Shown here: positions 7,421-61,189 of the stretch, piece after piece
Position numbering within the stretch: the first letter of the stretch is position 1
Layout of the letters: each line of letters opens with the position of its first letter
Origin: Chlorokybus atmophyticus
Lineage: Eukaryota; Plantae; Mesostigma and Chlorokybus algae
DNA length: 64,000 nucleotides
NCBI GenBank assembly: GCA_009103225.1
Contig: RHPI01003642.1
Location: 1,045,099-1,109,098 of the forward strand
Direction: 5' to 3'
Translations under genes and position numbers: made by a program
The notes under the pieces: model-generated
Database searches by the model: none
What the model was told of the DNA's origin: nothing
What the model saw: only the letters and a program-made list of their open reading frames with translations

Positions 7421-7440
7421 CACATGGATTCACATTGGTA

Positions 7441-22548: not shown

Positions 22549-25195
22549 CTAGCTCACAGTTCGCCGTTTCAACATTGCTTGCAGACGCACTAGCAGTTCT
22601 GTCTTGTTGCCTTGTAACAGCGCCATGTCAGTCCGAAACAAAGCAGAATCCCTGTACACACATGCCATAATGCTTTATGCACGCACAAGCAGTCACAGTG
22701 CAGTTGCAAGTACTGACCGTCCTTAGCCGCTTTGACAGGCCGATAGATGAGAGCGTTGAGCAGGGAGCCAAACAGGATTGCCAGCACGGTGCTCGAGAGC
22801 GTGGCTACGTTGTATGGCATGGAAAAGTCTGGGGTTGCTACCGGAAAGGTCAAGCTGTTGGTGAACAGCTGCAGCTCGGGAGGATTCTGCGCAGCAAGTC
22901 AAGCAGTTGAGACGCAGAATCTCATCCAACGAACTCAGCTTTTGCAGCATGCATGGCCATGTACCTGCAGCATCTGTAACAAGGGGGTGCCAAGGGGCTC
23001 ATCGCCGTGCGAGGGGTTTGTAGCCTCCTCATCCGCGCGAACTGTCACAACGGCAGCGGGCAAGTCGAAGCCACGGTTGGGATCGGGAGGGTGTTCGTCG
23101 TTGCGCAGAAAGGCCTGGATACATTGATCATGCGTATTGAAATCTTGACAGCCGCTTGAATGTGACAGATGTGTTTGGAACACATGAAAGACCACACGGA
23201 CACACCTTGTCAAATTCCATAACAACGGACACCATTCTGGTAGTGGATGGCAAGCAGAGGCTAATTTCCAGGATGGATGGCTTCTCCCTGTCCTTTGCAG
23301 GTTGCAGCCTAAGCGCTCGTAGCGCTGAATCCGGCACAATCGCGCTATCGACTAATACCCGCAGAGTGTGTAAGTATATCCTTACATACCAAGGCGCCAT
23401 CTGGAAGATGTTAACGCACTTTCTGGAAGTGGTATTAGCTGCAACGCGCTTGTTTGCATGAACTTCAATAACCATGCCTCCACGCTCGTTGCCGTGTCCA
23501 GTGAGATAGCGATCAATTGTAAACTGAGCTTGCGTGTGACTCAACTTTGAAGGCGTGCTGCTTTTGCTGTTGCCAGCTATGTCGAGACCACGTGACAACG
23601 CGTACGCATAGTATTGGCCTTGATCCCCAATAAAAAGCGACTTTGCTGGAGACACCAATGAGTCGCCCATGCTGTCGTGCACATACACGCTGCTGACAGA
23701 AGCCACTTCACACGCGCCATCAAGGGTGCTTCCAAAGAGGGAGGACAAGCTCCATGCCTCAGCAGAGACGGGTTTCAACAACACAGTCAGGGTTTGAGTC
23801 AAGACCAGTTTGGGGCCCAACCGCTGGATGATCACGTCTTGACTATAGTACTGCGCGGCAAACAGCCGCTCGCGCTGGGCGAGAAGCTTTGCCAAGCCCG
23901 CGTGGTCTCGGCACGGAAGCAGCTTCAGCCATGGCGTGAGGTTTTCTGTGCAGACCGCCTCACGAGCCAGAGCCCCGTACTTAGTGTTCGTGAACTGTGT
24001 GACATCATCAGTGCTACGGTTGGCGGCAAATGGAATGCCCACAGGTCTGAAGGCGAAAGCTGGCGCTGCTGTCTTTGCAGAGCCCTCGAGGTAGTTCAAC
24101 GACGCACATAATAACCTGGCACAGGTGTACATGCGACTGGGTTGGCCTAACTTGATTATGTATCAACGCACGTGCGGGCAATGCACATACACGCGCATGC
24201 ACACGCATACCTGTGTACGCAAACAGATGCATGCATGTGTGCATGCACAACCATCTGTTTGCGTACATGGGTATGTGAAGGCAGCAACCACCTAACGAGT
24301 CTCACCCGCTCAGAGCATGTGTCAGTGACCTCCACTCCTCTTGGACTTGCGCCTCATTGAGCCGAGGGTCAAAGCGTGCCCACAGCTGCGCGCCGGCCGG
24401 GGCTGCGGTATGAGGCGGGGCGCCCCACGCGCGCTGGTTCCATCGCCCCTGCGCGAAGCTCACGTACAGCTCTTGGACTGCAAACTTCTGCACCTGCACG
24501 TATAGAAAAGCAGTATGGAGTACTTCTGTCAGTCTGCAGTGCATGAGCTGAAGTGTACAGTGTCAACGATGTACGCGCAACACACGTCAAGGTTGCCCTA
24601 GCTGCATGCATGGAAGCTGAGTGAAGTTCTGGAAGGTTTTACCTTGTCACCAATCTAATACGACACAGACGCACATGCTCGCATGTGTATCGCGTGCTGT
24701 ATGCACTACATGCGGCAACGATGTGCGCCGTCTCTCCACTGACACAACCTTCAACAATTGCAGCGAACTATTGTTTGTTGCAAAGCAATGCAGCGTACAA
24801 TCACCCAGCTTTCAAAGAACCACTGGCATTCTCACAACAACCAACAGTGCTGTGAACTCCGCATACAGTAGCATCTTATTTGGGCGTTCACTTGTCATCC
24901 GCTGCGTACCTTTCAACTGACATGCAGTTGAGTGACATACCAGCTGGTGGATGGCTTTGGGGAACAGCAGCGAGTCGACGAGTTCGTCGCCTTGCTCGGT
25001 GTCAATGCGCCTCTGGTTGGTAAATCGTAAATGCGCAATCACCGCCGCATTACCCTTTGCGGTCGGCCGCAGCAGAAGCAGTTCCTCTGTGAAGGCGCAG
25101 CTCACAGGCGCAGTGGCTACAGCCAACGCCGACAGCAATAGCAATACCGGCAGCAACGACCTGGACGATGCCAACGACGACAGCAACCCCCGCAT
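22549..25195 (-). CDS. PIGT: GPI transamidase subunit PIG-T/Gpi16 (spliced)
   Basis: Signal-peptide-like start MRGLLSSL...AFTEELLL, FPKAIHQL, SFAQGRW, REAVCTENLTPWLKLLPCR, PDFSMPYNV plus a TM segment. The last exon boundary is approximate. Confidence 0.92.
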
Positions 25196-25336
25196 TGGGC
25201 AGGGGGAGAGATAGCCTGAGCCCAACTAAGCAAAGCCAAGCGTCAACTCCGCTGCCGCAGCCGACGCAGCCGACACCAACAAGCACGACCACAACCACGA
25301 CCACAAGCGTCACCACAGTAACAAGCTAGCTTCGGC
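25196..25336. promoter_or_regulatory. Very compact bidirectional promoter/5' region (PIG-T and PPR-SMR)
   Basis: Divergent ATGs at 25195 (-) and 25337 (+), 141 bp apart. Confidence 0.6.
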
Positions 25337-25342
25337 ATGGGC

Positions 25343-25378
<36 letters not shown>

Positions 25379-28026
25379 GTACGGAGCTTGTTGTGTGCGT
25401 CCAACACCGCAGCCAGCGCCGGCCTGCTCTCACCCTTGCCAGTGTCACGCCACGGCGGGGGCGGCGATGTTGGGAGGCTTCAGCCTGCATTGCGACTGCG
25501 GCACAGGCGCTTCTTCGCCCTTCAAGCAGCAGCACCATGGGTCTGCCGCTCTATAGCTTCGAGCTCTGACACTGCCCTGCTCTTGTCCAGCGCCGACAGC
25601 AGTGACGAACAAGACATCAGTAATGACGAGGAGGAGGATGACGAGGGAGATGGTGAGGCCAATGACGACGACAGTGACTATGACGACAGTCAGGACGAGG
25701 TGCGTGCACGACAGCTTTGGTTTAAGGCAGTTGATACTGCAGAGCAGCGAATTGCAGTAGCTCTGGGCGTCAAACATATGTCAGATGACCCAGCTGCCCT
25801 GTGCATGCATGATCACGATCTGCTGTCATGTTTACATGAGATACACAAGTCCACGCACAGTAGTATTTCCTGCACATTGCATACGTTGCCTTCCAACTGG
25901 GACTGTGTTTGTTAAGGCAGCCAAAGCTGTCCTCAAATGCCAAGCAGCTGGTGACAAGAAGCAGCAAGCTCTCAAGATGGCATTGCGCCGCAATGAACGT
26001 AAGAAAAAACCCAGGTGTGTAGTACTTCACGTGTAGCAATTGCGTGCGGTTCTCAGCTCACATTGAGTATCAACTTGAGCTGCATGCATCCACAAACAGG
26101 GCCTGTGAGTTCATTGTAGCGGCAATGGACTCTCCCGGACTGGAGGAGTATGGTACGCTCGCTCGTTTGTATGCGCACAAGCGGCTCCACATGGCAGCCG
26201 CACGCTTGCCCAAGATGATGCACGATAGAGGCATCACGCCCAACCGTGACGTGTACTACCATTGCCTTCGTGCGTGCGCACGTGCCGCCCGGCCGGCCGC
26301 AGCAGCTGCACTCCTTCAAGACATGCTGCACGTAAGCGAGTTTCTATTTGATTATTCGTTGGATATCGATATGAAGCTTTGTTGCATTGCAAACAGCATT
26401 GCAATGCAGGAACGAATGGTGGTTGGCGCACGCGAGTACAACACGCTGCTCAGAGCTGCTTCCAGAACGGATGACTATTCCATCCTCACACAGGTCGGAA
26501 TAATCAACCATCTTCTGATACCCTTATGCATTGGCCCATAAGATTGTTGACGATCGTTCACTTGCCTGGATGACATTGATGTATGCACCGCGTCACTCGG
26601 GTGCTTCTTACAGGCACTGGCAGCGGATACTTGGCTGCTGTTGATGTCCGGGCGAGGTCACCCCGTGCACGAGCTGATAGGTGGATGCCAAGCTGTCTCC
26701 CGCGTGATGCCTTGGTGGGAGAAGATGTGGCAGCAAGGCACAACCTTCCCGAAACCTAACCTGGAGTCTTACTGGTAAGTCTTCAATGCTCTATTGACAT
26801 GATGTACACTTGTTTTTAACTTACTGCAAGTTGTACAGCGTGATGATCGTTGCCTATGGCTTTGACGGTCACACCAAGCTGGCGGAGCGCATGTTCAATC
26901 GCATGATCATGGCCGGCATCAAGCCAAACCGCAGGGCTATGTTTGCGCTGATTGAAGCACAGACTCTTGCGGGTAAGTGCCAGTTCCGTTGTCGTGAGTA
27001 AACACTCACGTGCATTTACGTGTGCATAATATACACGTGCACTGGCATGTGCACAACCACACACATGGCTGCATCTGCCTGCGATACAAATCATGACGAG
27101 TTGTTGACTATGCCAGGCAACTTGGCTGGTGCCTTTGCTGCATGGGAATACGGCATATCCATCCGTAGTGTGGTGCCGCTTCCCCAAGTGGTATCGCAGC
27201 GCGACGGCATACTGAAGTGGGATCTGCACGGCTTTACACCCTTTGCTGCCTGCATTGCACTCCTGAAAGGACTACTGCGTTTGCATGCCAATCTGCAAGA
27301 CCCGACAGGTGTCGGCTGTGTTGGTACGCGAACAGTGAAGGACAGAGGATTGACTTTCGCGTGTTTCAGGAAGGACTGCATCTATCCAAGAGATACACAT
27401 TATTGTTGGAAGAGGACTTAGAAGCGAGAAGAGACTGCAACCCACATTAAAGACAGCGATTGTGCGCTTGGTCGACTTCTTACAACCAAGGCATGTTGCA
27501 GTGCGCTGGGGCGTAAGTGTTGCTGTGTGCTGCATTATAACCTGACATGTGACGCAGAAACGTTTCCTATGCTGGTTCTCAGTCCACAGCCTTCATCAGC
27601 AAGCGACCTATGCATAAGCAGCCGTTACCAATCTCAGCGATGACATGTTGCTGCAGGCTGGAGTACAAGATATATGCAAACAATGATGGCTGTCTTGTAG
27701 TGAAGAGTGGTTCGCTTGGGCGCTGGGCCCAAACAGAGGGCCTACCTGCGCACATAAGTCAGCTGGAACAAGCTTCTACCCCAGTCACACAACAACTCAA
27801 TCAGAAGGAAGAAGCCCTGAGCAAACTTGACCCCGCTTTTGCAGGCAAGTCAACTCACAGTTTTCTTGTATGTAATACATGTACGCCTTTCCACCAGCAC
27901 TGTTGTATGTGTCTGACTTCTCATCAATGACGTCGTGCAGTGTTTTTACTACCGCCGTCATTATTAAAGCCACAGAAAAAGGGTAACAGAATCCTTCAAT
28001 TGGTCAACTTGCCGGAATGCTCGTAG
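25337..28026 (+). CDS. PPR-SMR protein with predicted organellar transit peptide (spliced)
   Basis: Ala/Ser-rich N-terminus and acidic tract. PPR-like repeats (GITPNRDVYYHCLRACAR; YNTLLRA; PNLESYCVMIVAYG...MFNRMIMAGIKPN). SMR motifs KWDLHGFTPFAA, IHIIVGRGLRSE...LKTAI and NDGCLVVK. The C-terminal exon is uncertain. Confidence 0.85.
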
Positions 28027-30069
28027 CATGCATGCAGAACAGCAGCAGCCACGAGTCAATCAGACCTTCACCTGTGCACGACTGGGGCTTCCACTGCAAG
28101 CCAAGGTAAGCTTGTGATAAAGCTGCACCAAGTGTGTCACACAGCATGCATGCTTTCGCTTCAGTGGCAATGGTGCCGACATCAAGTCTCTTCTACTGTG
28201 CAGGTGGAGGACTTGTCTCTTGGCAACATCTAACATCACCTAGCAAAGGCATTGGCGGCAGTTCTCATTGCCTGCCTGCTTGGCCGAGCTGTGCAGCAGC
28301 AGCGTCACCAACATGTGTGCCTCCTCATGCGCTTCGCCTCACGCAATGCGGTGCAAGGAACTGTATTGCCTCGAAACTTCCTTGGCTTGCGCTAATAATG
28401 TACATGGTCATGCGGCATCACCTCGACTATGCTATGCTTGGTGAGTACTTTGAGAGTCGTGCGCACCTCGCGCTTGTTCATAACGAGATACGTAGGTTAT
28501 GATGACAATCTGTTGTCGCAAGCATCAAGTTTGGTGCGGTAAAGGTCACCATCTTTGCATAGGGTATAAATCGAAGGTCAACCAAGCAAACACAGGCTAT
28601 GCTCAAAGGCAAAGCATACACCGTAAGCAAGGCAAGGCAGGCAAAGCAAGCGAGAGACATATTTACAGTTACACTTGTGGCCACCACCGCACACTACACA
28701 AAGTGCTCTTATGTGCTGTGCAATGCAAGAATGGGTGAGGCAGATAGTAGCAGTCACCCATGCGACTGCATGGAGTTAATCAAGCCTTTACTTTTATGTC
28801 ATTACACAGCCATTGATCTATATTGTGACGTTGACCATGTGATACGTGACAAAATCAGTCATATGAACAAATGCCAGATTTTTCCGCATTGAGAAGTTGT
28901 GGATTGGTTGAAGCATGCATGCAAAGCATAAACATCACATTACATGGTACACGGCGTGCAAGTTTACACGCCACTAGTTCACATAATAGCAGCATGCGTG
29001 TCGTTCAAATTCCATTCGTAGTGCAAACTATAAAGCCTTTGTAATCTGCCATGCAATATATGTTGACAGAGTGTCAACTTGCGACATCTGAGGTTTGGTG
29101 TGTAGATATCAAGAACTTAACAAAACTGTAACACAATTACCATTTTGTAACATTGTATCATGAATTAAATAAATGAGTAGTAAGATTCAAGCTTACGGAT
29201 ACTTTCTTTCACACACCAGGAGTAGAATGCGTATAATTATACGCATATATATTTATAACAAGCATACTATAAGTTGCTGCAAAACCTTATATGTTGAATT
29301 CAATATAAAATTATACATTGGATTGTGTTTGCTCATGAACACAATCTATACAAACTACTCATATGCAAGCAACGTGCTGCTTGAGCAAAGATTTGCATGT
29401 TAACAATCGTTACATGACTATATCCGCGTCCCTGCAAGACGTCTTGCGATATTGCAACAATTAATTGATCGATGTATGGTGGTGGCCCCCTGCAGGAAGT
29501 CTCGCTTGCCCCAGCCCCTACTTGCATTGCACTTATAACGCATCTTCGTAATGTATTTGGGTTGTTGTTGCTTATGCCCCACCAAGTCTACATCTTGTTT
29601 TTACATTTCGCTTTGTTTCTTTACTAAAACCATGTGCATGTGTGGTTGCCTTCATTGTGCATGTCTGCTCTCATGCATGCATTAAAAAAAAACATTTACG
29701 TCCCAGATATGTGTATAAAAAAGACGGAGCGGTTGGGGTGCGACGTAGCGAGTTGTTGCATGTATAAAAGCAGCTGTGGACCACAAATTGAGCATACAAT
29801 GACAGACTATCAGTGCATATTATGCAATTCGGGTGCATGCAGTTCATGTTGCTTGCCCCCTCTGTGCTATTCTCGTGCATGCATAAAAGCAGCTATTGCT
29901 ATGGCCCATTGGGTCATGGAGCTGTATCACGACCATATTTGTGAGATCAATCCCCGTCTCGAAAACTAGGGGTGCGGCTGATTGGGCGCGAGGCGGGCGG
30001 CCGTCACCAGCGAGTCACCACACAAGAATTGTCAGTACAATCCATCAGTGCAGGCTGAGGCCTGCCATA

Positions 30070-30491
30070 CGCCATCTCACCGTCACACCAGGCATACAAG
30101 GAGCGACGGACGGGACGTAGTGCAACAATGCAGCACAGCATATGGCGTCACTTAATAGAATATTGCTTGGTGTGCTAGCATACCGGATTATATGGCGCGA
30201 TATGCTCAACAGCATATGGATGGATATTACACATATGATATCATGCATGCAATGTGACCTGAACTCTGTTAACTCAGCGACGTCAATGATCACACGCCAT
30301 CTCACCGCCACAACAGGCATACAAGAAGCGACGGACGGGACGTAGCGCGATACTGTAGCACAGCATATCGCGTCACTTGATGAAATATCGTTTGGTGTGC
30401 AAGCATACGAGATTATATGGCGCGATATGCTCAAAAGCATATGGATGGTACACATTGCACACATATGGTATCATGTGCAATGTGATCTGAA
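30070..30491. repeat. Tandem duplication, ~225-bp unit, 2 copies
   Basis: cgccatctcaccg..caggcatacaag.agcgacggacgggacgtag...attatatggcgcgatatgctcaa...gcaatgtga.ctgaa starts at 30070 and at 30295. Confidence 0.92.
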
Positions 30492-30933
30492 GTAAAAAAA
30501 AAATGATTTCCAATTCCGTTATATTAGCTGCGTTTATGTCACATTATGACTTTACTCATTCAACCAAGATCTCACGACAATTATGCAACATTGCACTATA
30601 CCAAGCCATATCACACCATATGGTATCACGGAGATCGATATGCGGCATATGATGTCATATGGCGTGTTATGGCAGAATGTCGCGCGACGTCGCTGGACAT
30701 CGCAAGTTCCCTGTGCGTCATTAAAACGGAGTTCAAGTCACATTATGGGTCTGTGCGTAATGTGTCCTGCGTATGATGGGATATCATACGCGCCCGCGCG
30801 ATATGGTTGACGACTACCACAGCCCGGAAACCAAGTCGCATGCAAGCTCCTCGACGGCAGTGACGCCAAGATTGTCGGGCGTAGCCGCTGCGTTGTTCCG
30901 TTGGTGCATTGCGTCGCTTAGTTACTCACGTCC

Positions 30934-33107
30934 ATGGCGGGTTCTCGATGTTTTGCCACCTTCGAAAATCACTTCGTCCGCTGCATCTACGGCTGCAACC
31001 TCACAGGCATATACAAAGGCTGGATCGCCAGAGAGGGAGTGCAAAACTTCAGGTCTCACCTTACTAGCGGTATCCACAAGGACGCCTTCAATGCATTAAC
31101 ACGCCAACAGCAAGACAACTTGCTGAAGTACTTGTTGGATCTGGTGAGTCCTGCATGCATGGCATGTATTGTTGTGCACGGGTCAAATGTCAAACTGCTC
31201 CACAGCCTGGGAGCCTAACAATGTGCAATGTTACTGGCAACTTACTTAAAGTGCATGTTGATGTCTGCACGATCGCACAGACGGAATTATGCGGAATCCA
31301 ATTGCAATTTTGTTTATGTACTTGTTGCCACTTAGGGTCGGGCTGCAGTGGCACAACACAACTTCAATCCTACTATCGGTGCCTTTATGTCAGTTGCTGG
31401 AACGTGGCCTTTGCAGCAAACAACCCCCCTGCCACCGTTGCTGCATGATGTTTTGCACCCTGTTGAAATTTTATACGATCCTTACCTCATCGAAGACACG
31501 AACGCCAGTGCCTTGATTGGTGCCAACAGATGTACGTGACTGCTTCGTGGTAACATCAGTTTCCATGCAGTGCATATATCCAAACAGGTTCTCGTGTGAC
31601 TCCGTCCAAGCGCCGTAAGAACTTGTCTATGGTGCCTGATACTCCCACCACGTCTCATGTCATTGACGCTGAAACAGGTGATCAATGTCATCGTTGCAGA
31701 GGTTCCAACCTGATCATGTCAGCTATATAAACGCAGGGGAAGCAATGCCGCGTTTGTCAACTCACCAATTTACACCTGAGCTTATGTGTGCTGCTATCGA
31801 CACTTTCATTGCCAACCTGCTTCGTGAAGTACAAAACAACACGTCGTCGTCTACAAAACGAAAGTACCAGTATTTAGTACCATTATTTAACACACACCAC
31901 TGATGGCATTGTTTGCAGATTTTAAACTGGTTGACGAGAACATAGCCCTTCGCGAGCGCAGCCTAAAGCAAGCAGAGCAGCTACGCCAAAGCCAGACACA
32001 GCCGGATCCCCAGATCGCTACAAAGTTGTCGAAAATAATCAGTGAAATTAATGGTCTGCGTGTAGGCCATGCTGCTGCAGAATAACGTTTTGCTGACATG
32101 GAGCGTGCATTACACAAAGAGCGTGCTGAGCACGCAAAAATGACAGAAAGCGTTAAAAACGCAGACGCAGCAATCATTGTGGGTTTACGCAAGCAGCTTA
32201 CAGAAGCTCAGCGCAGGGCCACACAGTTGCAGCAACACAATGAGCGTAACAATGCAAAATTGGCATGTTGGCAATGCCAGATTGGAGAAGCCAACCAGAC
32301 GATTGCTGCACACAAAAACAAAAGGGGTGTGTTCCTGCATTGTTAGATATTCCAACTGACTTGCTGTTGTAGATCTCAGAGTTGACAAGCGTCCTGCGTC
32401 TTTAAACGGCAAACTGGCGATTTTGTGAGCGCGTTGAACCCAGTGGCGTGCAGCTCAAGAGCTTCTAGTTGGAACCGGAAGTCAATAGCAAGGAGTTGTA
32501 CAGCTTAGCAAAGTACATGTTGAAAGAGATCGACCTTGACAAACAGGTACTGAACAATCACAGTTATTACATGTATAAACAAATGCAACACTTTAGTGTC
32601 CACTGGTTGGCGTACCAAGTATCGCTCCTCGATCGCAGAGATGTTAACAGGGAGCAGCAACTGCAACTTCACCAAACACTCTGGGAGAAGCTTTGTACCT
32701 ACCTCTGCACATTTGCCCCATTGCTGCGTGAAGCAGCAACAACTGAAGAAATGCAGCAACATGTGCGCCAGGACTACAAGGGCAAGCGCGTGGTAGACAG
32801 TGAAGACAACACATGCGGGATCTGCTGCGAGCAGAAGCTAGTGGAAGCGTCGCTACCAATGCCATGTTGCGGAGCTACGCTGTGTCGTCAGTGCTTGAAG
32901 AAGCTGCGCACAGGATCTCACTCTTAAGTTGAGTGTCCTTTTTGCCACTGCTTTTATATTATTTTTATGGATCGCCCACAACGTGGTGCAGCGTCCCCCG
33001 ATTTCCCTGTATATGAACTGAGCAGCAGTGACGATGATGAGGATGTTGATATACACAATACCGGTGCTGCTGGTGCTGGGCCTTCGCAGCCACCCCCCCC
33101 TGAGTAG
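30934..33107 (+). pseudogene. Spliced gene relic: N-terminal C2H2/BED-like Zn finger, coiled coil, C-terminal RING, acidic tail
   Basis: VRCIYGC...QNFRSHLTSGIH; coiled-coil ORFs 31903-32346 joined across TAA 32083; CGICCEQ...MPCCGATLCRQCLKKL...S*VECPFC (TAA 32925 inside the RING); the frame continues to TAG 33105. Confidence 0.75.
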
Positions 33108-33873
33108 ACCTGTATCATGGAACCCGTTTTGCCCTTGTGTTAACATGACAAGCCNGTGCTCTGTTGATACCTGTATGGTTATGTTGTTATGGAACATGCT
33201 TGTACAACATCCACATGGCCGCACACATTGTGTTGTCACTGTGTGATATTTGCGATAGGCAGCATACGGATATTTCTTAATCTTCTGTGCATTTAACTAG
33301 GCTGGCAAGCAAAGTGGACATTGCTATCAATGCACACTGCATGTGCTACAACCATTTGTACATTTTTCTATTGCAGCGTCTGTTGTTAATGTGTATTAAG
33401 TATGAGTCATTGCCACAGTACAGTAACCAAGCTGTTGCACAGATTTGCAGCACCCAGAAGTTGAGTCGAGTGTCTCGCATTGCCATGCGTGTCAGCGACC
33501 CATAACATAGTGTACAGCACATAAAGGTTAAACACAGCGGGATAGTCGTTGCCAAGATCAAAGCTGCAAGGCGATCAGTGTATACACACATGCTAAAGCA
33601 CTGCAATTGTCTCCATCCACCTGTGTGGAAGGTGACGAATATGGAATCTCTCACACATACACTCCACTGCATACACTTACACCAAACACCACAGCATTCG
33701 TACATTTTATGAAGTTACACCAACACAGTTACACCTCTAATATGCACCCACCTGTATTATATCGATACCAAAGCATGGTGTCGCACAAACTGTCAAACAC
33801 ACATGGTGAACCCCACACAAACAATAGTTAGTTTCACGCCATTTTCTTGTTTTTACTGCCAAAACCGCTACCA

Positions 33874-34191
33874 CTACGTCGGCGCCCAAAATGCTTTGAA
33901 CCTTGGGTTGCCTTCATTCATATTGTAACCTTTGCACCCACGAGAATTGTATTGGGCGATATACCTAGTTTCTAACCAATCTATTCGCGCCTTGTAAGGT
34001 TCTTCATCTAAAACTTTCAACCGCACTTGCTCTTCAAAAGGTTTACTGCTATGTAAGTCATGCAACATTTTCTTAGGCGGGTGTCTACGATGTTCCCCAT
34101 AACGTCGACATGGGTGGCTACTTTGACCGATATATACTTTCTGAGTTGCCACATGCGTAAACTTGTAGATGAACTTCGCACCTGTGTTCAT
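33874..34191 (-). CDS. GIY-YIG endonuclease domain ORF (105 aa)
   Basis: FIYKFTH...KVYIGQS, RRYGEH, WLETRYIAQYNS, GYN: the YIG motif and the conserved Arg, Glu and Asn are present, with no internal stop. Confidence 0.88.
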   Translation of the reverse strand: MNTGAKFIYKFTHVATQKVYIGQSSHPCRRYGEHRRHPPKKMLHDLHSSKPFEEQVRLKVLDEEPYKARIDWLETRYIAQYNSRGCKGYNMNEGNPRFKAFWAPT

Positions 34192-35345
34192 GGGTTGCGC
34201 ACGTTTTGAGGTACGTGCAGAGGCCCTGATGTTGGTGTTGGCTTAATTGATGCTGTTTCTTGCTGCTGAGGATCGCTGGATCTTGTGAAACTCGTCTTAT
34301 ACCTGCAAAGAACAATGTTATGAATGCCGCAGTACACATCCGAGATTGATGTTGAACAATATTGACATACATGCGTAGCAGACGTAGAAGCAAGGAAACA
34401 GACAACGGGCAAAGGATAAGAAGCAAGGGAGACAATGAAAAAATAGAAGTGTAACAAAAGATGGAGTGATTGCATGGGTTCTGGCTTGATGTGTCCATTG
34501 TTGTTGGAACACTGCTCCGCCACCATAGCTCTCATGTCATCGCGTCATCTTGGCAAGCACAGTAATCCCATCATCAACTTGGATAACAACACACCTCATT
34601 GGCAGCAACATTTGCTACTGGAGCTTCCCTTGGGTCAACTTTGTAAATTTGCTTAATGATTGTTTCTGCCTTTCCTTGCGATATGAAACGCGCTGTCTCC
34701 CGTTGCAAACTTTGCGAACGTGCACCAGCTCGAGCACATGTCAAACATCTATTAACTATAGGTGCTTTGGCCAATGATCCAGTGTCACATTAATATATAC
34801 CTGATTAGCGTAAATTGGCTTTGCATTATCAGGAAGATCTGGGTTGTCATTGCGCATCAGAGTGTCCCACAGCTTGTAGGTTACTTGGCGCTTCAGGTCA
34901 TCACAAATGTCGATGCCGAGCTTTCTGAGGTAGTAGATGCATGTTCCTGCACATACATGTATCAGTTAACACATGCACCACAGTGTGTAAGTGTACTTTA
35001 ACCGCCTCTCACCAGTTGCAATGGAGTCCCCGTGGTTAATGCGAAACTCTTGAGCTCTCGCTTTGGCAGGGCGAATTAACTTATTGGCCTCAAGCTTAGT
35101 GCACAGTCCCTCTAGCTTGTCGGGAGTGATACTTGCTGAGTCACATGCTACCTGTTGCTTTGCTGTCAGCGGACGACCAGGCGCATCACCTGCAGAGCTA
35201 CTGGTACGTGAACGCTTAGAGCCAGGTTTGTCATTGATAATTTGAGCGTGGAGCCTCTCGAACAATTCTTTCCCGTCAAAGTCCATGCTGTCAACCAGAT
35301 GCATTGTCAATGTAACGCTAGCCAACATGTTGACTCACAAAGTTC
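34188..35345 (-). CDS. Unknown intron-containing ORF between the helicase and GIY-YIG (may be a relic)
   Basis: Exon-like segments with canonical splice signals: ~35330-35000 (DFDGKELFERLHAQIIND...), 34947-34800 (CAG|G TCIYYLRKLGIDICDDLKRQVTYKLWDTLM...NQ|GT), ~34750-34600 and 34302-34188. No family recognised. Confidence 0.45.
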
Positions 35346-35913
35346 GAAACTAAACAGAGGCAAACTGAGCCACGTGTTACCTGTGTCTGGCTAAGATGAC
35401 AGTCTTCGACGATGGGCAGGTGATGCGACGGGCATGTATGCACAGTGCCCTGCAACTTGACATCTTATCTGGTATGTACATTTGTAGCAACGTTAAATAT
35501 ACTGCCAATGTATATCTGCGTGGCAAGGAAAAGGTCTGCATCGGCAGAGCACCACGTGCTAAGCCATGCGGCGATGCGATTGGTGAGAAGAGATGATGGG
35601 ATGGAGGAGATGATTGCATAGAAAGCATGGTTGGATGACGGGCGATACGGCAATCAACTGAATGTGCCATGTCATCAAATGTACAATGTGTACAGCGTGG
35701 TCATGAGATGCAATTCATGTTACGCGACATGGTTTAATATCGTCCAACAAGGAACCATATAATGCAATGTTGTGCAACATTGTTCATACATGCTCAAACA
35801 TCATGCGATATGCGTTGATATCAAACAACGTTGCGCAACATCGTACCATATCGCCAAAATGATGCACGACATATGTCACACTACTGCGCAACACTGACTG
35901 AACTTCCCTAATA

Positions 35914-38900
35914 TCAACGTGAATCTCCAGGAACGGGCGTCATCTCTTCAGGGCACGGCAAACGAGTTAACCATAAATAGGCCCCGTTTCTCACATGTGA
36001 CAACGCCACATACCACAGTCCAAGAGCAAAAGCTTCCTGCATGTGGACAACAGTAGATGATTGTAGCGTTGCACCTTGACACTTGCACACTGTCATTGCA
36101 TACGCTAGCTGCAAAGGAAATACAGCTTTGTAGTATATTTTGCCTTGAAACGTTGTTGTTTGCTATATTGTTCGGCGCATCCACATGGATTCTGCCAAGT
36201 AATCAAATGTAACTTGTATACTGCTCACATTACCTTTATAGTATCTAAACTGCGTCACTGTTCTCAAAGACCCATTGGCTATACCATCTTGCAGTGAAAC
36301 GTTTTCAAAAACCAACACCTTTGCTCCCTTGGCAACTAAAGGTAAAAAGTTGAACTTGGGCTTGTGGATCAAGTCGTACAATTCGGGCACGTTCACTGCA
36401 TTAGAATTAATTTGTATTAGCATAATGGCATCGGCTGCAAAACGTTGTCTCACAATGATGCTGTTGAAAGCTAGTGTGTCTACATGTGAACACAATGATG
36501 CTGTTGAAAGCTAGTGTGTCTACATGTGAACACGATATGGTTGCATCAGTTGGTAATTGCTGTAAGTACTCCGAAGTGACCAGACAGCAACTTAGCGCAT
36601 CTGCGATCTCTGTTGAACTGGGTATGCCAGAACGAATTTGAATCAAGAATTGAGCAAACAGAGGGTCTAAAGCATGACGCACTGAAACAGAAAGAACATG
36701 TTGCCTACGTAATGGCCACCTCTGTGCTGCAGAAATATGGCATTTGTGGCAAACCTGCGATGTTTCTTGGACTTTGTGTCCACAAACTGCTGGCAGTTGC
36801 TTGTGGTCACCAACCAATATATCGCCAATTGTTTGTAGAAATTCTGGTCCATGAGTTTTATGTAAGCGCAGCATCACCAAGTCAAACAACTGCGATGTCA
36901 TCATGGAAAACCCGTCTATAATAAACACTCGACAATTTTGTAACAGTTTGTAAACATCATTCATAGCAGTTACAAACCGAAGTTGCTGACCGTTGACAGG
37001 TATTGCGAAGTTGCAATGTACAATTGAGGCAGATGAGCTCAGCCGCAGAGCCGCAGCGCCAGTTGTAGCACTGAGTGAAACAGGTATCGTAGCAACGCGC
37101 AACTGGTGAGTGATGGATTTGGTCAAAATTGTTTTGCCTGCTCCTGGACAGCCAAATATTACTGTAAACCAACTGGTGCTACAATGATACTACTTGCGGT
37201 GCGTTCTTGCTGGCTGGTTAAAGACAAATTGTTCGCAAACGCAAACTCCTTAACATTCACCGTACCTTGAAACATAGGAGGCAATACATCTGAGTCCGTT
37301 GTCACAGTTGAAGCTGGAGATGCAGGATTAGATGATGGTGCTGTTGGATACTGCGTGGTAGGTTCTGGTGCAGTGTGGCTGTTTGTCGGACCAGCTGCAG
37401 CCATAGAGAAGGCATCAATAGCATTATAAGTGGTCTACATCATAGCGTTCATCATATGGTGAATCTTAACATCATTGTATGGATGACGTTCGGCATAGCG
37501 CGTGACATGTGTCAACACACTGCGGTTTGTGTTGTTCATAAAACCCCGCAACAAACATTCTTCATAGTTTGTGCGTGATTGGTTGTTCAAAGAAATCAAA
37601 ACAACAGAACAAAAAGTAACCCGCTGAAGAAGTAAATTGAAACAAGACCCCTGAATGCTGTGTACAGGATGGTAATCTGTGAATCTGATGATGCGTGGGA
37701 CAGCTAACTCACAAACGAATGCATTCATTCTGTTTCTTAAAGTATGCACAGTGTTATGTGGAATAGTGTCTCCAGCTCGATGCATGTACTGTCGAAAATA
37801 GTTGTACATTATTACTCTTTCCACCTCGTCAAGCCTGACACAATAACGATGAATGAGATGCACAATTAGTGTCTATGCACGACTGTTCACCATGCGAGAA
37901 CAATTGTTAGGCAAACGCGTGTCAACATATGTTACATTGGACGACATTTGCATGATGGGAATATCCAAACATATCAAAGCAGCTTTAGCTGGAGCAATGG
38001 GTTTGGACAAGTACATTGTGTCAATATGCGCAATTCATGAACAGTCAATCCTTGCAAACCAAGTGCACTGGTGTCTAATGTATAATCAACAGTGCCACAA
38101 GGTTCCATTTTGGTTGTGTATTTCACTAAATACTTGCTCCAATGACTGTGACTAACTTGCAACACATTACAATGAGCACCCCACAACAATAAAATCACTG
38201 GATGTGTGGGAACAACATTGCGGTCACAAGTGCGTGGTCTATAATCGTCGTACGTGCGCGTTTCTGTGTTTAACTGAGGTCGACGATCTGGTTGTACGGG
38301 ATATGAAAAGCCCATGTCGCACTTGTTGTTAAATGCTCTGCAGCCACTGCCCACATCAGAACACTTGTGCATCTGCTTGCGTACAACATATTCATAAAGG
38401 ACTTGCAGTATGGAATCAATTGGTACAATCATTTGCTAATTTGCATGGTTAAAATCTTCGGGGATAAACGCAGTGATTTCATTACAAACTCGTTCAACAT
38501 CATCGGGGTGTAACCACAACATAACATGTGCATGCAAAGATCAACGGTGTTGTGTTTCATACCGGATAACAGAATGCATCACATGTGCAAGAATATCCTC
38601 TTGCATGATATATTCTTCAAAGAAGGTGCTGAATCGATGATGAAACAAACGTGCGCACTCCACAGGGGCATCGCGCCAGCTGAGTTACGCGGAGACGTTG
38701 TGGAGAACACTCTGCAAATCAATGATCCAAGGAAATTTGGTAATGGACATTTTATCTGCAGTCATGGTGATAAAGAGATGAGGCATACCCCCATGCTCAA
38801 CCAAACACAGCAGCTCACTCAACTTTTGTCGATGCCAGCGAAGATCCAATGCTGTCACCAGGGACACGAAATTTTATAGCGTTTTTGATGGCATCGTTGA

Positions 38901-40085
38901 TTGTGGCAGGGGGTCGTTGTTTAAGGAACTTTTCAATATCAGCGTCCACAAAACTTCGCGGCACTATCTGACTGTGAGAAGTGATTGACGAATTTGGTAC
39001 ATCAACAGCAAATAAGGCTTGTTCAATGTGAAAACTGAGAACGATTGTGTGAGACAGAACTAGACATAATCTTACAATCTGCTGTACACATTAACATCAA
39101 AGCAACGATTGTGCGGAAACAACATGGGAAACAGAGCAGACTCAACAGTTAAACCAGGAATGTTGTACGCACCACTTGTATCCATGTGTATTAAAAGAGG
39201 AACACAAGGCTCACGCAGCGACATATGTCCAACGCGCAACATGGTGTTCACTGTGACTTCAACTAAGCTGAGCGAAGGAAATGGCAACAAAGTGTTTAAA
39301 ACGTATGTGTATGCTGATTCACCAGCAATATTTAAAGTATTACGATTATGTGCACGAGACACAATGCTACGAATAGTAGATGAACCAACAATGGGAATGC
39401 CGTCAAAACAAGTGCTTGTTCTGCCAAAGTTTGATATTTTTGAGCGAGAGTATTGGACGATAATAGCTCGCTCAACAACTCCAGCAACATGGTGTTATGT
39501 TGGCACTGCTGTGTGAAATTATCCAAAGTGAGAAACGGACAGGTTGTTATATTCAACTGCTGAACTTGGCCTAAAGTGAAACTGTATGAGTTATATAACT
39601 GACTTGAAGTCGCAAAGCACCATGGACGTGTTGACAGAGGACAACATCTGCACTACCATGGGATGTGCCTCTAACAACTTGCGAATGTACACTGCGCTGT
39701 GTAACACAATATAACTGGAACGCTCCGACCCGTGACTACATCGATGGCATTGGTAGTAATTACTATCACACTTGGTACAATGGGACATAAAGACATTAAC
39801 CAAATCATATGGTGCAACAGTGGGTATTGATTGTTGATACATTGGACGATAAGTAGCAGCAGGAGAGTAAAACTGTACATGCCCGCACAAAGAACAACAT
39901 TGCATTTGCGTGACAAACTTACGTTGTGCATCTTGCCAACAGGAAAACATATCATCGCAGTCGTCCCACAATTCGCAATACTGAGACAAATCGCAGTGTT
40001 GCTCGTGAGTCACAGCGGATGACGAAACAATACCAATTGGAACATATCAACCGCCCTGACATTCGTCGCCATCCAATGAGCCATC
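35914..40085 (-). pseudogene. Helitron RepHel (HUH Rep plus PIF1-like SF1B helicase), frameshifted and with stops
   Basis: ESALFPMLFPH; GGMPHLFITMT (motif I); RYETQHR*SLHAHVMLWL (HUH at 38526-38534); HKC..C..C..GFSY; YLVKYTTK (motif III); GCPGAGKT (~37130-37150); SATTGAAA; FIIDGFSM; VGDHKQLP; R...D..F...L..IRSG; LAYAMTVCKCQGATL; YVALSHV. Confidence 0.93.
36451..36530. repeat. Perfect 40-bp tandem duplication inside the helicase
   Basis: cacaatgatgctgttgaaagctagtgtgtctacatgtgaa at 36451-36490 and 36491-36530; shifts the frame. Confidence 0.97.
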
Positions 40086-42423
40086 TCGGCACAGTCCAGC
40101 AATTAGGGCGTGCACTGAAGCAAAGTCCACATGTACAATATCTCTGATGTGTTGCAATACAAAACGCGTACGTTGCAATATGAAGCACATATGCTGCAAT
40201 ATGGTGCAATATGGCGCAACATGGTTGGCAACCTGCAGTTAAGTGTTACGAAACTTAATGTTCAACATAACGTTTACGCCACGGTACGTGCTGCGATATT
40301 CAGTAAGTTATGCCAAGGTTACAACCATCAAAATAATGCTAACCTAAATTACCTTAACGTTAAGATTCAACTCAACGAAACATCGTATCGTTAGGCCACC
40401 ATTTGGTCACGTATGAATTTGATCAAATGGGATCGCAACGGTGACAACAGCCGTTGCTAAAAAAGGCAGCAAATTGGCCAATCATTGCAGAGATGCGTAA
40501 AGATGCTAAAAACTATCTTTGCGGCAACTGCCTACCAACGGCGACCCAAATCGCTAGGGATGCGGTGCAATTGCAGCACAGTTAGTGGTTAAAACGGCCG
40601 CATTTTGGGCGGTACGAGGTCGGGGCAAGCCCCATACCCCAAAGACATATCGCCACTACTTACCCTCGGTCTAACTGATCAATTCTCCCATTTAACGCCG
40701 ATTGATTACATGCTATAGTTACTGCGTCATCAAACATGGTCAACAGCCGAAATATATTTGAGGTGTTGTATTTGAGCTGCATGTTGAGTGTAAAAGGGAG
40801 GATCCAAACCAAGCCCCACGTATTTCCGAAATACGGGCAACGGGGGCTGTTGAAGGGGCGGGGAGAGGGGAGGTGCGGAAGCAATAGTGGACCATACATG
40901 CTAGCACAAGTCAACAATTCAATTCTGCTGTTCGGGCGCATCCGTTGCCTGCCTGGGTCAGGTTGGGCCCCCCAAAGGCAGTGCCATCCTGGCAGCCACT
41001 GGCTTCGCCATTATCATGAGCATTGCCACGGTGGCCGCCACCGTGGGTATTTTGCGCCTTGTTAGTACACTGTATCACTAGTTGGTACATGTACGTTAAG
41101 CTGCGGCGTAACCCGTGCGTACGCAGCATCGGCCCAGTCGCTGTGGCGCGTAGTGTTCTATCGCGTTGGTAATCAAGCTGCGCGACGGGTAGGTAACCTA
41201 CCCGTAGGTTGTGGTGACGCAGCACCGGCGAGCACGTTTTTATCCGGCGACGCGCCCAAAGCAAGTTGATGACCACGCGAGGTATGGCGCGGATCAGATC
41301 AGAAGCCGTTTACGCTGCCGTTAGCACTACGTGGCAAATTTCTGTCTCAAAACCACCTCATCGCTGATGAGCTGGTCGTGCTCATCCACCCCCGTTGTCC
41401 AATCCGCAACAGCCGCGTACCTGGGCCAGCCCTATGTGACGTGGCCTTGAGGGTGGCCACGATATTCACCAATAAAGAAAGGCCCCCCGGCTCGACGCGT
41501 TGACTCCGTGGAGTCCATGCCAAACACGGGCAAACCCCGCACACAAGCAGCATTGACCTGGCCTGTGCTGAATGCAAGTCGTTGCCCTTTCTGCGCGCTA
41601 TGCTTGGCCCAAGCAGCAGGGGCAAGCTCAAACGTAAGATGGAAGTGCAGTTCCGATGACGTGAGCGGCAGTTCGGGCGCTGTGTTGGCACAGGCGGCCG
41701 TTGGAAGTCGTACACTCAGTCCTGCCGTACACAGACCTGCACAGCTGGACGCACCAACACAGCATCCACCGCGTCCGATTTATGCAACCCGATTGACGCG
41801 CCACGCGACTGCGAGATCCTGACCTGCGACCGAGCTGGGAGGGTTTTACTTTGCATACACGGGACCCAGCGCCGCTGGTTCCTGTACATCTAGATAGTTT
41901 ATCGCGCCGTTCCCCCCAGTTTCCAACCGCCCCCCTGACCGCACCGTTAGCCGTTGCACGCTGCGTCTCCCGCCCTCACCAGCTGGCCGCGGAGCCAAAA
42001 GTTGCCATCCAAGCGCGCCGGAGACTCCCCTCGGAACGTCCTTCGTCACTTTAACTGACTTAAAGCCGTTGTCGAGAACCCTTCATGCGCAGTTGCCGGA
42101 ACACTCCCGCACAGTTGAGAGCTTTTCAAGCCATGGTAGATAACCAATCAAACACGGTTGGTGATTTTTGTTCTTGAGGATCCGGTTAACTGCCCGATTT
42201 GGAGGCTTCATGTTTGCGATTTTGGTGGAAAATAGTTTGCCACCTTGGCACAAAGGCGGCGCTTTGCTTTCGTGACGGCGGGCTTGTGTAGGTCGATAGG
42301 TTGGGGTGGCGGCGGAGTGAAAGTTGGTGGCGACGGCTTGGGCGTGGAGGTTGGCGCTGTGGGATGCGGTGCAGTAGGGGAAGGAGTAGTTGTTGCTCGA
42401 GTAGTTGTTAACGTTTGTTGACC

Positions 42424-43403
42424 ATGGCCTCGTCTATGGCGATCGCCGGAAGGACGGTGGCGAGGACGGGCGTGCGGTTGGCGCACGCCGCCGCCACTGT
42501 TGCTGCTGAGGCGCCACGGCTGGCAGTGGATGACCGGGCGTGGGTGTTCTTGGGTCCTCCTGGTGTTGGGAAGGGCACTTACGCAAGCAGGCTGGCGAAA
42601 ATGCTCGATGTGCCCCATATCTCCGCTGGTGACCTCGTCCGGGCCGAAATTTACAAGGGCACAGCCCTCGCACGTCAGATGGCCGCAACCACCTCGGCTG
42701 GACAGCTTCTGCCCGACTCCTTGGTGCTGGACTTGCTTAGGAGACGGCTGGACGCTGGGTACGCTGCTGGAGAGCAGGGGTTCATCCTTGATGGGTTTCC
42801 GCGCACCTACAACCAAGCGGTGAGTGACGCAGTCTTTGCCTTAGACCTAGCTGCGTCAATGTAGCTTAGCAAGTTGTTACGTTGCAGACACTGCTATAGA
42901 CACTACCGCCCTTGCCTTGTCGTGTTGTTTATTGTTAGGGTAGATTGCCTGCTTTTGTACAAGCTTCCAGAAGCTAACGTATATGTGTCCTGCAGAAACT
43001 GTTGTCGGATGTTGCGGATATCTCTCGCGTCATTAACCTGCGCTTGAGGGAAGACATCCTTGTGATGAAGTGCACTGGACGACGCATCTGCTCTGAGTGC
43101 GGGGGTAACTTCAACGTTGCCAACATTGACTTGCCCGGCATTAAGATGCCTCCTCTTCCTGCCCCCACTGGCTGCGAGGGCAAGCTACTTACTCGCGCGG
43201 ATGATACCGAAGCTGTGGTGCGTCAGCGTCTGGCTGTGCATAGGAGGGAGTCCGCTCCTGTTGAGGCATACTACAGGAAAGCTGGGCTGCTGATGGACTT
43301 TGACATTACCGGAGGCATCCCCGAAACCTTGCCTCGTCTTCTGGAGGCTATTCAGGCGCACTCGGTCTCAGACGAGTCTGATGATGAGCCAGCCGTGGCA
43401 TGA
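42424..43403 (+). CDS. ADK: Adenylate kinase, plant organellar type (one intron, 42820-42995)
   Basis: WVFLGPPGVGKGTYASRL, HISAGDLVR, GFILDGFPRT..QA|, GRRICSECGGNFN, RADDTEAVVRQRL; N-terminal transit-like extension. Confidence 0.95.
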
Positions 43404-44594
43404 AGCATCGCTGGCAGCCATTCTGCCTGGCATGCACCACCGAGATACGCGATGTACACTAGTGCGCTGCAACCTCCCTGGCAACTCTAGCCACCCGCAG
43501 AGTGTTTTGACAAACCCACCCCCCCATTCAGGGCTTCGTGACGCATCCGCCTTCTACCCACATTGGTGAACTGGATGCACAATTTTTTCACACGCCCCGG
43601 CGCCCTATCACCCTATTCTTCGTCACCAGCATATCTGGTGATCTTGAAAAGAGGCTTCTGTCTACTGTCATAGACTTGTAGTTAGTCTATTCTTGTCCAC
43701 TCTCGTTCACGCAAGTGAATGCCTGTAGTAGGTTTGGTGGCTTCTGACATCAGAAACTACACCACATTCTTTCATTTATCGTGCTGACTGATTTGTGCGC
43801 TCCCAATGCACTGCACAAGCTTCTGTTTGCAGTGCATGCATGTTTACTGCCTTGTTTGTGATGCATGCACAGCCTGTGAGTGTCTTGATATCAGTGCACT
43901 ATTGGTAAACTGCTTCGATTACCAATGAAGTGGTCTTGTTTGCGAATTTGTTGCACACATAACTTGCATTCTGTGTACACTGAGTCGCAGCTGCTTTGAT
44001 GACCTCTATATCTGTGTACAGGATATGTGCGAGACAACTGTGTGTGTGACACAACCATAACATAACACATGATAGTGCTTTGGAATCTCCCATTCTGTGC
44101 AAAGGCACAGCGGTCGCGATAGAGTTGAGTGTGATTGTGGTAAGTGTCCATGCATTTGTCGTGTATGTTGTATACATCACGTGCATGTTCTGTACATTGA
44201 GTGATCAGTAACAAGATGTGTGTCGTACATGTCAGTGTTATTGGCAGCACACCATGCATAAGATATGAGTGTACAATATATAGGATGCAGAGATTGTGGC
44301 ATGTATCACAATGTGAGGCATGCATTGCACACCACACACAACAGCACACAACACTTACATTCACCACCGGGTGTTCTTCCTACTTACTACCTACCTAACT
44401 TCACTACTAGCCCAAACCCCGTTAGACAAGCACGCATGCACGCGCATCACCTGCACCACGGCCGTTGGTTAGCGGCTCCATCATCCAGCAGGCAGTAGCA
44501 GCAGCGTCAGCTGACTCAACGGACTCCCCCTCCTCCGCCCACATCACCGCCGCCACCCACGACAGCGTCGTCCCTGCTCAACGCGACTGCGTCG

Positions 44595-44603
44595 TTAGGG
44601 TTT
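44595..44603. promoter_or_regulatory. Telo-box-like motif (TTAGGGTTT / AAACCCTAA)
   Basis: Exact TTAGGGTTT in a GC-rich island between ADK and TTC1. Confidence 0.35.
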
Positions 44604-45599
44604 GCGCCCGTCGGCGCGCAGCATGCATATGCACAGCACGCCGCACTCCCTGTGTCGCAGTGCCGTTGCTGTGTGCGCCTACTTCGATGACACGGGCAGT
44701 TGGTACTGCTCCCCATGCACTCAGACTCTCTAGTAGGTATACATATATGCATGCGCACTTTGTGACCCTTTTCTTGTACAAACATGTCTCTGCTATGTAG
44801 GTGTACAGCAGCATACCCTGTTTGTACCCAGAACTAATGTACTGCTTGAACATCAACCACCATGCTCATGATCAGGCTTGTGCGGGCATTTAGGGTAGCA
44901 TAAAATAATCGTTCTACATCTCCTGGCTAATACTGTAGCGTTTGCCTGCTGTTATGGCCGGCTTATTGGTTTCCTACGTACATACCTGCATCCTCTTTCA
45001 TACCGTATGCATCGAAGGCAACTTAGGTGTTACAAATCTGCACGATTTGCTGCCATTGGCAGTGAATGCATTCTCAAGCCAGCAGTGCTGTGAAAGCACT
45101 GCCTTGCCCTGCTTGCCTAGACCAAACCCAGCAGCATAAGCGTCGGCAGTGGCGACTCGCCACACCTGCCTCCTCCTGCATCATCAGCTGCTACACCTGG
45201 ACTACTTGTTGTACTTGCTTTGACCGGTTGTTTGTTTCTGGTGCGTCCTTGCCGGTCACTAAATGGTCATTGAGTACATGCCTGTCACGCTGCCGGCCAA
45301 ACAGTTGTCTACCAAACCCATGTGGTGGTGGAGTAAGAAGCAGGCCACCTGCGGAGCTGTGCATGCGCATCAACAGGGGTGGGCAGCTGATAAATGGCCA
45401 CGCCGTTCCAGTGTGCAGCATATATTGACTATTTCAAAAGTTATAAATGCCAGCTTATCAAACAGGGCTAACAGCTCACACAGGGCTCAGCCGGAAAGGC
45501 CCCTGACTCAATAACATTGGAGTCCATCAGTTGCGCAGACCCATGAGACCGCCAGGTCTGGTGTTGAGCACTACAGCACTTGGCCTTGAACAGTAAATG

Positions 45600-54290: not shown

Positions 54291-54355
54291 CGCCACCACC
54301 ACCTGCCGCCAACAAGGTCGCCGACGACGACGCTGATGCTGATTGCAACATGTTG

Positions 54356-58834: not shown

Positions 58835-61189
<2,355 letters not shown>

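What the first reader, a model, noticed from the sequence alone, without database searches (positions are those of the whole stretch)
29966..40600. Large Helitron-type element carrying a GIY-YIG nuclease and a RING-finger gene
Seen: a complete but decayed RepHel, then on the same strand an unknown spliced ORF and an intact GIY-YIG ORF, a convergent Zn-finger/coiled-coil/RING gene, a 225-bp duplication and a CTAG|T candidate 3' end. Known: Helitron variants carry AP endonuclease (Helentrons), OTU, RPA or Fanzor cargo. Inference: this is one ~10-kb rolling-circle element with a second, GIY-YIG nuclease plus an E3 ligase, possibly an uncharacterised Helitron subgroup. I cannot confirm whether the combination is already catalogued.
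Basis: partly seen in the sequence, partly recalled or inferred. Interest (0 to 1): 0.85.

Follow-up and report, generated by a model that had tools for sequence, protein, structure and literature searches.

The report
Helitron nuclease behind a leaky stop
This is a dead copy of an algal rolling-circle transposon whose family carries a DNA-cutting enzyme behind a second gene; in seven distant relatives that enzyme has no start codon of its own and seems to be made only when ribosomes read through a stop codon, a control I found no report of in Helitrons.

Summary
The anatomy is real, but this copy is dead: RepHel, the spliced ORF2 and the RING gene all carry stops or frameshifts; only the GIY-YIG core is intact. 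The RepHel is Helitron2 (HLE2) type. GIY-YIG follows ORF2 beside RepHel in 10 of 11 related lineages that can be judged. That pairing is in print once (Sphagnum HelenSM92, PMC11417382), and this scan noted it before on other DNA of this genome.

New here is the junction. In seven lineages (GIY-YIG 18-41% identical) ORF2 ends at an in-frame TGA 3-13 codons before the catalytic Tyr, with no ATG between. TGA-CT, a known readthrough context, occurs in four; three have no splice acceptor that could skip the stop. Two others join by an intron (one only probable), one lies in the -1 frame. This window has an ATGA stop/start overlap; a related copy appears to add an A_AAA_AAC slippery site. Best reading: a rationed ORF2-nuclease fusion; no translation data exist.

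The RING gene is probably family-specific cargo. The element's ends, including the CTAG|T end, were not established.

The parts
35914..39989 (-). RepHel pseudogene (HUH-Y2 Rep plus PIF1 helicase), HLE2-type motif 2 with a stop inside it
36451..36533 (.). 40-bp tandem duplication that breaks the helicase frame; largely missing in an X1 contig
34188..35286 (-). ORF2, a spliced helical protein with a low-complexity basic tail; exons 35286-35013, 34946-34801, about 34728-34595, 34302-34188; broken (TAA at 34299 and 34245, probable frameshift in exon 3)
34188..34207 (-). ORF2/GIY-YIG junction: A4 run (A6 in an X1 contig, by its indel table) and ATGA overlap; TGA lies 20 nt before the first Tyr codon
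33874..34191 (-). I-TevI-like GIY-YIG nuclease domain, catalytic residues intact
30934..33107 (+). Convergent spliced pseudogene: putative Zn finger, coiled coil, RING-like domain (about 32811-32945), acidic SIM-like tail; stops at 32083 and 32925; probable cargo
30066..30491 (.). Two copies of a unit of about 200 bp, 225 bp apart, 86% identical
30520..30720 (+). Degenerate CATAT/ATTGC-rich spacer upstream of the RING gene
35690..35900 (-). Same kind of spacer upstream of ORF2
40110..40290 (-). Same kind of spacer upstream of RepHel
29966..29977 (-). Candidate 3' end ending in CTAG then TTTT; one copy of a 12-bp direct repeat; unproven
40554..40565 (-). Second copy of the 12-bp direct repeat (11 of 12 identical), upstream of RepHel; role unknown

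Best explanation
A dead copy of a roughly 10.6-kb Helitron2-type element from a green-lineage clade with two core genes: RepHel, and ORF2 followed by a GIY-YIG nuclease. SHOWN: the gene order, its conservation, and the layout of the junction in each lineage. INFERRED: one ORF2 mRNA makes mostly ORF2 alone and a minority ORF2-GIY-YIG fusion, as Gag and Gag-Pol are made. Most lineages do this by readthrough of a UGA in a leaky context. This alga's family and L009 would use a -1 frameshift (or, here, restart at the ATGA overlap). L008, and probably L003, join the two by an intron. More speculative (about 0.35): ORF2 carries the nuclease to the nucleus and to DNA, where it nicks target or donor DNA to aid integration or copying, the role Helentrons are thought to give their AP endonuclease; rationing would limit damage to the host genome. 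The RING/SIM-like gene is cargo of this family and may blunt host silencing (inference only).
For: GIY-YIG after ORF2 in L002/5, L003, L006, L007, L008, L009/10, L011, L012, L172 (convergent to RepHel) and L173. Catalytic residues kept at 18-41% pairwise identity, so the domain must be translated. In-frame stop with no Met before the first Tyr in 7 lineages: 7 of 7 TGA, 4 of 7 TGA-CT against 3.3% background, nominal p about 4e-5. UGA-CU is a published readthrough core (PMC4207609). No AG between stop and Tyr in L006, L007, L012. Strong RNA stems 3' of the stop in L007 (z -5.0) and L011 (z -2.1). TGA junctions occur in at least three separate parts of the RepHel tree. An X1 contig lacks the window's TAA at 34245 and has two more A's at 34203, which gives A_AAA_AAC in the ORF2 frame with GIY-YIG at -1; A_AAA_AAC is among the most shifty heptamers in mammalian tests (PMC5009743). 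L009 shows the nuclease inside Helitron2 termini.
Against: No RNA, ribosome-profiling or protein data: no RNA run holds the stretch. The lineages share ancestry, so the p-values overstate independence; against 17 ordinary stops, TGA alone gives Fisher p 0.054 and +4C p 0.085. Five of seven junctions have no notable 3' structure, nor do L009 or the window. The X1 junction is read from an indel table, and not all 25 substitutions of that contig are shown. Near-cognate start codons lie after the stop in six of seven lineages. The Edaphochlamys element (L174) lacks GIY-YIG, so the nuclease is not essential to the clade. ORF2 has no known fold. The window's ends were not found.
Confidence: 0.62

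Rival explanations
1. GIY-YIG is a separate small protein made from the same mRNA by reinitiation or a non-AUG start after the ORF2 stop (AUG at the ATGA overlap here; CUG, AUU, AUA, ACG or UUG elsewhere). It is coupled to ORF2 but not fused.
For: The ATG overlapping the TGA in the window is in the GIY-YIG frame; an unchecked scan note reports the same overlap in another copy (s1-182590); near-cognate codons follow the stop in six of seven lineages; green algae have bicistronic mRNAs (PMC11291117).
Against: It does not explain why frame, TGA and TGA-CT are kept. L172 has no near-cognate start. ORF2 is rich in AUG (11 in the window exons, 16 in L012), against leaky scanning, and PMC11291117 found no support for reinitiation in algal bicistrons.
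Confidence: 0.2
2. The stop is decoded or removed by another route: UGA read as selenocysteine, RNA editing, or a small intron.
For: All seven stops are UGA; introns do join ORF2 to GIY-YIG in L008 (197-nt in-frame intron) and probably L003; L011 has a CAG after the stop.
Against: The position is in a variable linker, not a catalytic site; three lineages have no acceptor; UGA is an ordinary stop for RepHel in 6 of 9 loci, so the code is standard.
Confidence: 0.08
3. The RING gene is a separate insertion or neighbour; the element is only RepHel plus ORF2-GIY-YIG (about 7 kb) and ends between 33140 and 33870.
For: The L009 element ends about 230 nt after the GIY-YIG stop with no RING; no RING in L172 or L173; no X1 contig bridges RING and GIY-YIG, and X1 contigs diverge at 33138.
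Against: RING exons are multi-copy in X1 at similar depth and about 90% identity; its upstream spacer resembles those before RepHel and ORF2 (top 0.4-2% of a null set; regions chosen by eye); the 12-bp repeat brackets all three genes; several unchecked scan notes report the trio elsewhere in this genome.
Confidence: 0.2
4. Chance neighbours or an endogenous virus remnant.
For: RING look-alikes in the Atlas are mostly viral clusters, all under 0.9.
Against: Conserved order across ten lineages; spliceosomal introns; the best matches in viral contigs are distant PIF1-like helicases at 28-29% or less.
Confidence: 0.03

Closest known systems
HelenSM92, HLE2 family of Sphagnum magellanicum (HELIANO, PMC11417382)
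   Same: HLE2 element carrying a GIY-YIG domain besides RepHel.
   Different: Described in one sentence as a captured domain in one family; no ORF2, no clade-wide conservation and no recoding mentioned. Its supplement was not held, so kinship could not be tested.
Helitron2 (Bao and Jurka 2013, PMC3627910), including Fanzor-carrying CRe-1/2/3
   Same: HLE2-type Rep; asymmetric terminal inverted repeat plus 3' hairpin seen in relative L009; an accessory nuclease gene in a green alga.
   Different: The nuclease is GIY-YIG, not TnpB/Fanzor, and sits behind a stop codon; DUF6570 was not detected; termini not seen in the window copy.
Helentrons (Thomas et al. 2014, PMC4067079)
   Same: Same Rep motif-2 signature; a second endonuclease travels with RepHel.
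   Different: Helentron AP endonuclease is fused to RepHel; here the nuclease is of another fold and belongs to a second gene.
I-TevI GIY-YIG homing endonuclease
   Same: Best sequence match (E 1.6e-7) and best structure match (TM 0.57-0.65) of the catalytic domain.
   Different: The domain is C-terminal, behind ORF2; no I-TevI-type C-terminal DNA-binding region.
Gag/Gag-Pol recoding of retroviruses and LTR retrotransposons (own knowledge; PMC5009743 for heptamers)
   Same: An upstream protein in excess and an enzyme fusion rationed by readthrough or -1 frameshift, with lineages switching between routes.
   Different: A rolling-circle DNA transposon; no paper on recoding in Helitrons turned up.

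Membership tests
Helitron superfamily | HUH-Y2 Rep with motifs 1-3 | tested here: met
   Motifs FITMT, ETQHR*SLHAH and YLVKYTTK present, motif 2 broken by a stop
Helitron superfamily | PIF1 helicase in the same gene, C-terminal to Rep | tested here: met
Helitron superfamily | Defined termini, no target duplication | tested here: inconclusive
   No second copy or empty site in hand; 12-bp direct repeat of unclear meaning
HLE2 / Helitron2 | Ser in motif 2 and aromatic-x-x-Arg just before it (PMC4067079) | tested here: met
   The window has Arg before motif 2 and Ser in it; nearly all homologues likewise
HLE2 / Helitron2 | Asymmetric terminal inverted repeats with 3' hairpin, T|T insertion | tested here: inconclusive
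   Met in relative L009 (15-bp repeat, 7-bp hairpin, 5' boundary from L009 vs L010); not found in the window copy
HLE2 / Helitron2 | DUF6570 marker domain (proposed in PMC11417382) | tested here: not met
   No hit at E 0.01 in six full-length relatives; a proposed marker, not part of the original definition
HLE2 / Helitron2 | Placement in the HLE2 clade against Repbase references | not testable with these tools
   No reference sequences available; the tree holds relatives only
HLE1 (canonical Helitron) | Leu in motif 2; 5' TC, 3' hairpin plus CTRR, A|T site | tested here: not met
   Ser, not Leu; hairpin before CTAG not significant
Helentron | AP endonuclease fused to RepHel | tested here: not met
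   No such Pfam hit in relatives; RepHel ends after the helicase
Proto-Helentron | HLE2-type Rep with 5' TT and 3' CTAG ends | tested here: inconclusive
   CTAG candidate at 29966 unproven; L009 has inverted-repeat ends instead
GIY-YIG nucleases | Y-x10-YxG, Arg, His, Glu, Asn and the fold | tested here: met
   (pLDDT 84)
Programmed stop-codon readthrough | Leaky context plus conserved in-frame coding after the stop, no own start | tested here: met
   7 lineages; met in relatives, not in the window copy
Programmed stop-codon readthrough | Measured readthrough product | not testable with these tools
   Needs reporters or ribosome profiling
RING E3 / SUMO-targeted ubiquitin ligase | Complete RING ligands plus SIMs | tested here: inconclusive
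   Below Pfam cut-off, no His at the usual ligand position, stop inside the domain; SIM by eye

The most novel reading that the evidence does not exclude
A green-lineage clade of Helitron2 elements has a conserved second gene of unmatched fold whose C-terminal GIY-YIG nuclease is rationed by programmed UGA readthrough, replaced in some lineages by -1 frameshifting or splicing. This would be translational recoding in a eukaryotic rolling-circle transposon, and would make the nuclease a regulated part of Helitron transposition.
Probability: 0.55. Interest if true: 0.8.

Novelty: new variant of a known kind. Interest (0 to 1): 0.62.

Why it matters
Why some Helitrons keep a second nuclease (AP endonuclease, Fanzor, GIY-YIG) is an open question. 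A conserved device that limits how much nuclease is made would show that it is active, costly and under selection for dose, not passive cargo. It gives short natural readthrough and frameshift cassettes from the green lineage that can be tested at once in reporters. It also explains why gene callers truncate or miss this domain (most database versions start at an internal Met), so it is probably undercounted.

Tried and rejected
Direct homologue searches with the GIY-YIG ORF and the RING exon found nothing (length-limited, so blanks mean little). The metagenome scan gave one true relative (L012) and otherwise distant PIF1-like helicases; the viral scan gave only distant helicases. Some loci are microbial contigs from human-gut metagenomes; none was taken for human DNA and none was used beyond one bulk HMM scan. 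ORF2: no Pfam, Atlas or PDB match (model pTM 0.47). Termini in the window: hairpins not significant, inverted repeats at chance level. A reassigned genetic code was rejected (RepHel ORFs of 1,350-1,600 codons have no internal TGA and often end in TGA). Leaky scanning was judged unlikely (AUG-rich ORF2). The careful tree did not finish; the quick tree was used, and the GIY-YIG tree was not built, so co-phylogeny is untested. For the tree only, RepHel pieces were read with X at each break. Reads were laid on the interior, so X1 could not be used for the ends.
Full report
Setting. The window is from an intron-rich alga-like genome. Scan notes name Chlorokybus; I did not test that. The stretch 29966-40565 is 45% GC against 52-53% in the flanks.

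RepHel. Full-length relatives of 1,350-1,600 aa align along 39989-35926 on the minus strand at 29-40% identity. Pfam finds Helitron_like_N and PIF1. The gene is dead: a TGA inside Rep motif 2 (38543), several other stops, frameshifts, and a 40-bp duplication. Motif 2 has the Ser and the upstream Arg that Thomas et al. give as diagnostic for the Helentron/Helitron2 side (PMC4067079). There is no AP endonuclease and no DUF6570 in six relatives.

GIY-YIG and ORF2. The ORF at 34191-33874 passes the Pfam cut-off, keeps the catalytic set, folds with pLDDT 84 and is closest to I-TevI by sequence and structure. I fetched contigs for twelve RepHel lineages. GIY-YIG follows RepHel by 1.3-2.7 kb on the same strand in L002/5, L003, L006, L007, L008, L009/10, L011, L012 and L173, and lies convergent in L172. 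It is absent in Edaphochlamys (L174); L001 ends too early to judge. Between the two lies ORF2. Its window exon 2 is the top hit for an HMM made from relatives alone (E 0.006), exon 1 is a weak second-ranked hit (E 1.1) and exon 3 is not detected. ORF2 is predicted helical, with no match in Pfam, the Atlas or the PDB. Spliced models were searched exon by exon; the joined step was left out.

The junction, the main result. In L002, L006, L007, L011, L012, L172 and L173 a frame open for 57-266 codons, ending in most cases in a basic, NLS-like run, stops at an in-frame TGA 3-13 codons before the first catalytic Tyr, with no Met between. The next codons are CTG, CTC, ACA, CTA, CAA, AGC and CTA. TGA-CT is 4 of 7 against 3.3% of 815 background stops (nominal p 4e-5; Fisher p 0.014 against 17 ordinary gene stops). 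UGA-CU is a published readthrough core in fungi and mammals (PMC4207609). Three lineages have no AG between stop and Tyr, so splicing cannot skip the stop. L007 and L011 also have stable stems downstream; the other five do not. The domains are only 18-41% identical yet keep their active site, so they are being translated. The seven are not independent: four form one clade, L173 is in another, and L011 and L172 are unresolved (quick tree). The simplest reading is an ancestral UGA junction kept for a long time.

Other lineages reach the nuclease differently. L008 has a 197-nt in-frame intron, and L003 a clear acceptor just before the domain. L009 has GIY-YIG in the -1 frame with G_GGA_AAG shortly before the ORF2 stop; alternative splicing is not excluded there. 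In the window the TGA at 34190 overlaps the GIY-YIG ATG and lies 20 nt before the Tyr codon, one base short of the 21 nt in L011, L012, L172 and L173. The exon-3 donor is phase 0, which picks the last-exon frame that holds two TAA stops and runs straight into GIY-YIG; an extra small exon in that intron would change this. Run X1 (a relative at about 90% identity) has a contig that lacks exactly the TAA at 34245 and has two more A's at 34203. By that table its ORF2 ends at the TGA, carries A_AAA_AAC in frame 12 nt upstream of the stop, and has GIY-YIG at -1. This is inferred from an indel list, not from a sequence I could read. AUG-rich ORF2 argues against leaky scanning.

RING gene. Convergent, spliced, 30934-33107. 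The RING is below Pfam cut-offs and is split by a TAA at 32925; another TAA at 32083 reads CAA in X1. Atlas look-alikes are RING clusters, all under 0.9. For membership in the element: similar multi-copy depth in X1; an upstream spacer resembling those before RepHel and ORF2 (regions picked by eye); a 12-bp repeat found only at 29966 and 40554; unchecked scan notes of the same trio on other pieces. Against: no X1 contig bridges it to GIY-YIG, and it is missing from L009, L172 and L173. I put it at about 0.75 as cargo of this family only.

Ends. Sister contigs L009 and L010 diverge just before a TTC start, and L009 has the inverted copy of that start followed by a perfect 7-bp hairpin and a T run about 230 nt after the GIY-YIG stop. 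That is the Helitron2 layout (PMC3627910), with the nuclease inside. In the window no such repeat was found, and the hairpin before the CTAG has z 0.2.

How it probably works. Shown: anatomy, conservation, junction layouts. Inferred: RepHel peels and copies the element (established for Helitrons); ORF2 is made in excess and a small share is extended into the nuclease; the fusion nicks target or donor DNA to help integration or copying, and rationing limits harm to the host. The last step rests on analogy to Helentron endonuclease and Fanzor only.

What is known. HELIANO mentions a GIY-YIG captured by one Sphagnum HLE2 family (PMC11417382). This scan had noted the RepHel/GIY-YIG/RING arrangement on other DNA of this genome. 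Neither those note summaries nor my paper searches mention readthrough or frameshifting in Helitrons; the library lacks most subscription journals and Repbase. Verdict: a new variant of Helitron2; the pairing is partly known, while the recoded junction appears new and is directly testable.

Noticed in passing
L009:105-8640: A complete 8.5-kb Helitron2-type element with intact RepHel, clear termini and GIY-YIG; a good model copy. A SET-like fragment may lie in the ORF2 region at 7537-7830 (by eye).
   Followed up: partly
L001:6404-7060 and L003:6167-6973: Long open frames (217 and 267 codons) begin in frame right after the RepHel TGA; in L001 it looks like the start of ORF2. Possibly a second coupling point.
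   Followed up: no
L172:6800-8300: ORF2-GIY-YIG with the same TGA junction lies convergent to RepHel: an inversion or a neighbouring element.
   Followed up: partly
L174:15440-25440: The Edaphochlamys RepHel has no GIY-YIG within 10 kb; a gag-like gene follows instead.
   Followed up: partly
window 33140-33750: About 0.5 kb between the RING and GIY-YIG stops is absent from run X1 contigs: a possible insertion or divergent 3' region; it contains an N at 33155.
   Followed up: no
window 28900-29965: AT-rich stretch (40% GC) with a perfect 20-bp palindrome at 29227-29246, beyond the candidate end; may be another repeat or part of the element.
   Followed up: no
window 1-7800: Other transposon remains by eye: CACTA-like and OTU-like pieces (also in scan notes) and a pogo-like DDE fragment at 7131-7646; a 66-bp tandem array at 3708-4138.
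   Followed up: no
window 23100-28900 and 42400-59600: Ordinary host genes recognised by eye only: PIG-T-like, PPR/Smr-like, adenylate kinase, MTR4-like helicase, CFAP45-like flagellar protein.
   Followed up: no
L002:6830-6870 vs L005:8170-8200: Sister contigs diverge about 80 nt after the GIY-YIG stop, where L002 forms a hairpin: a possible 3' end for that lineage.
   Followed up: no
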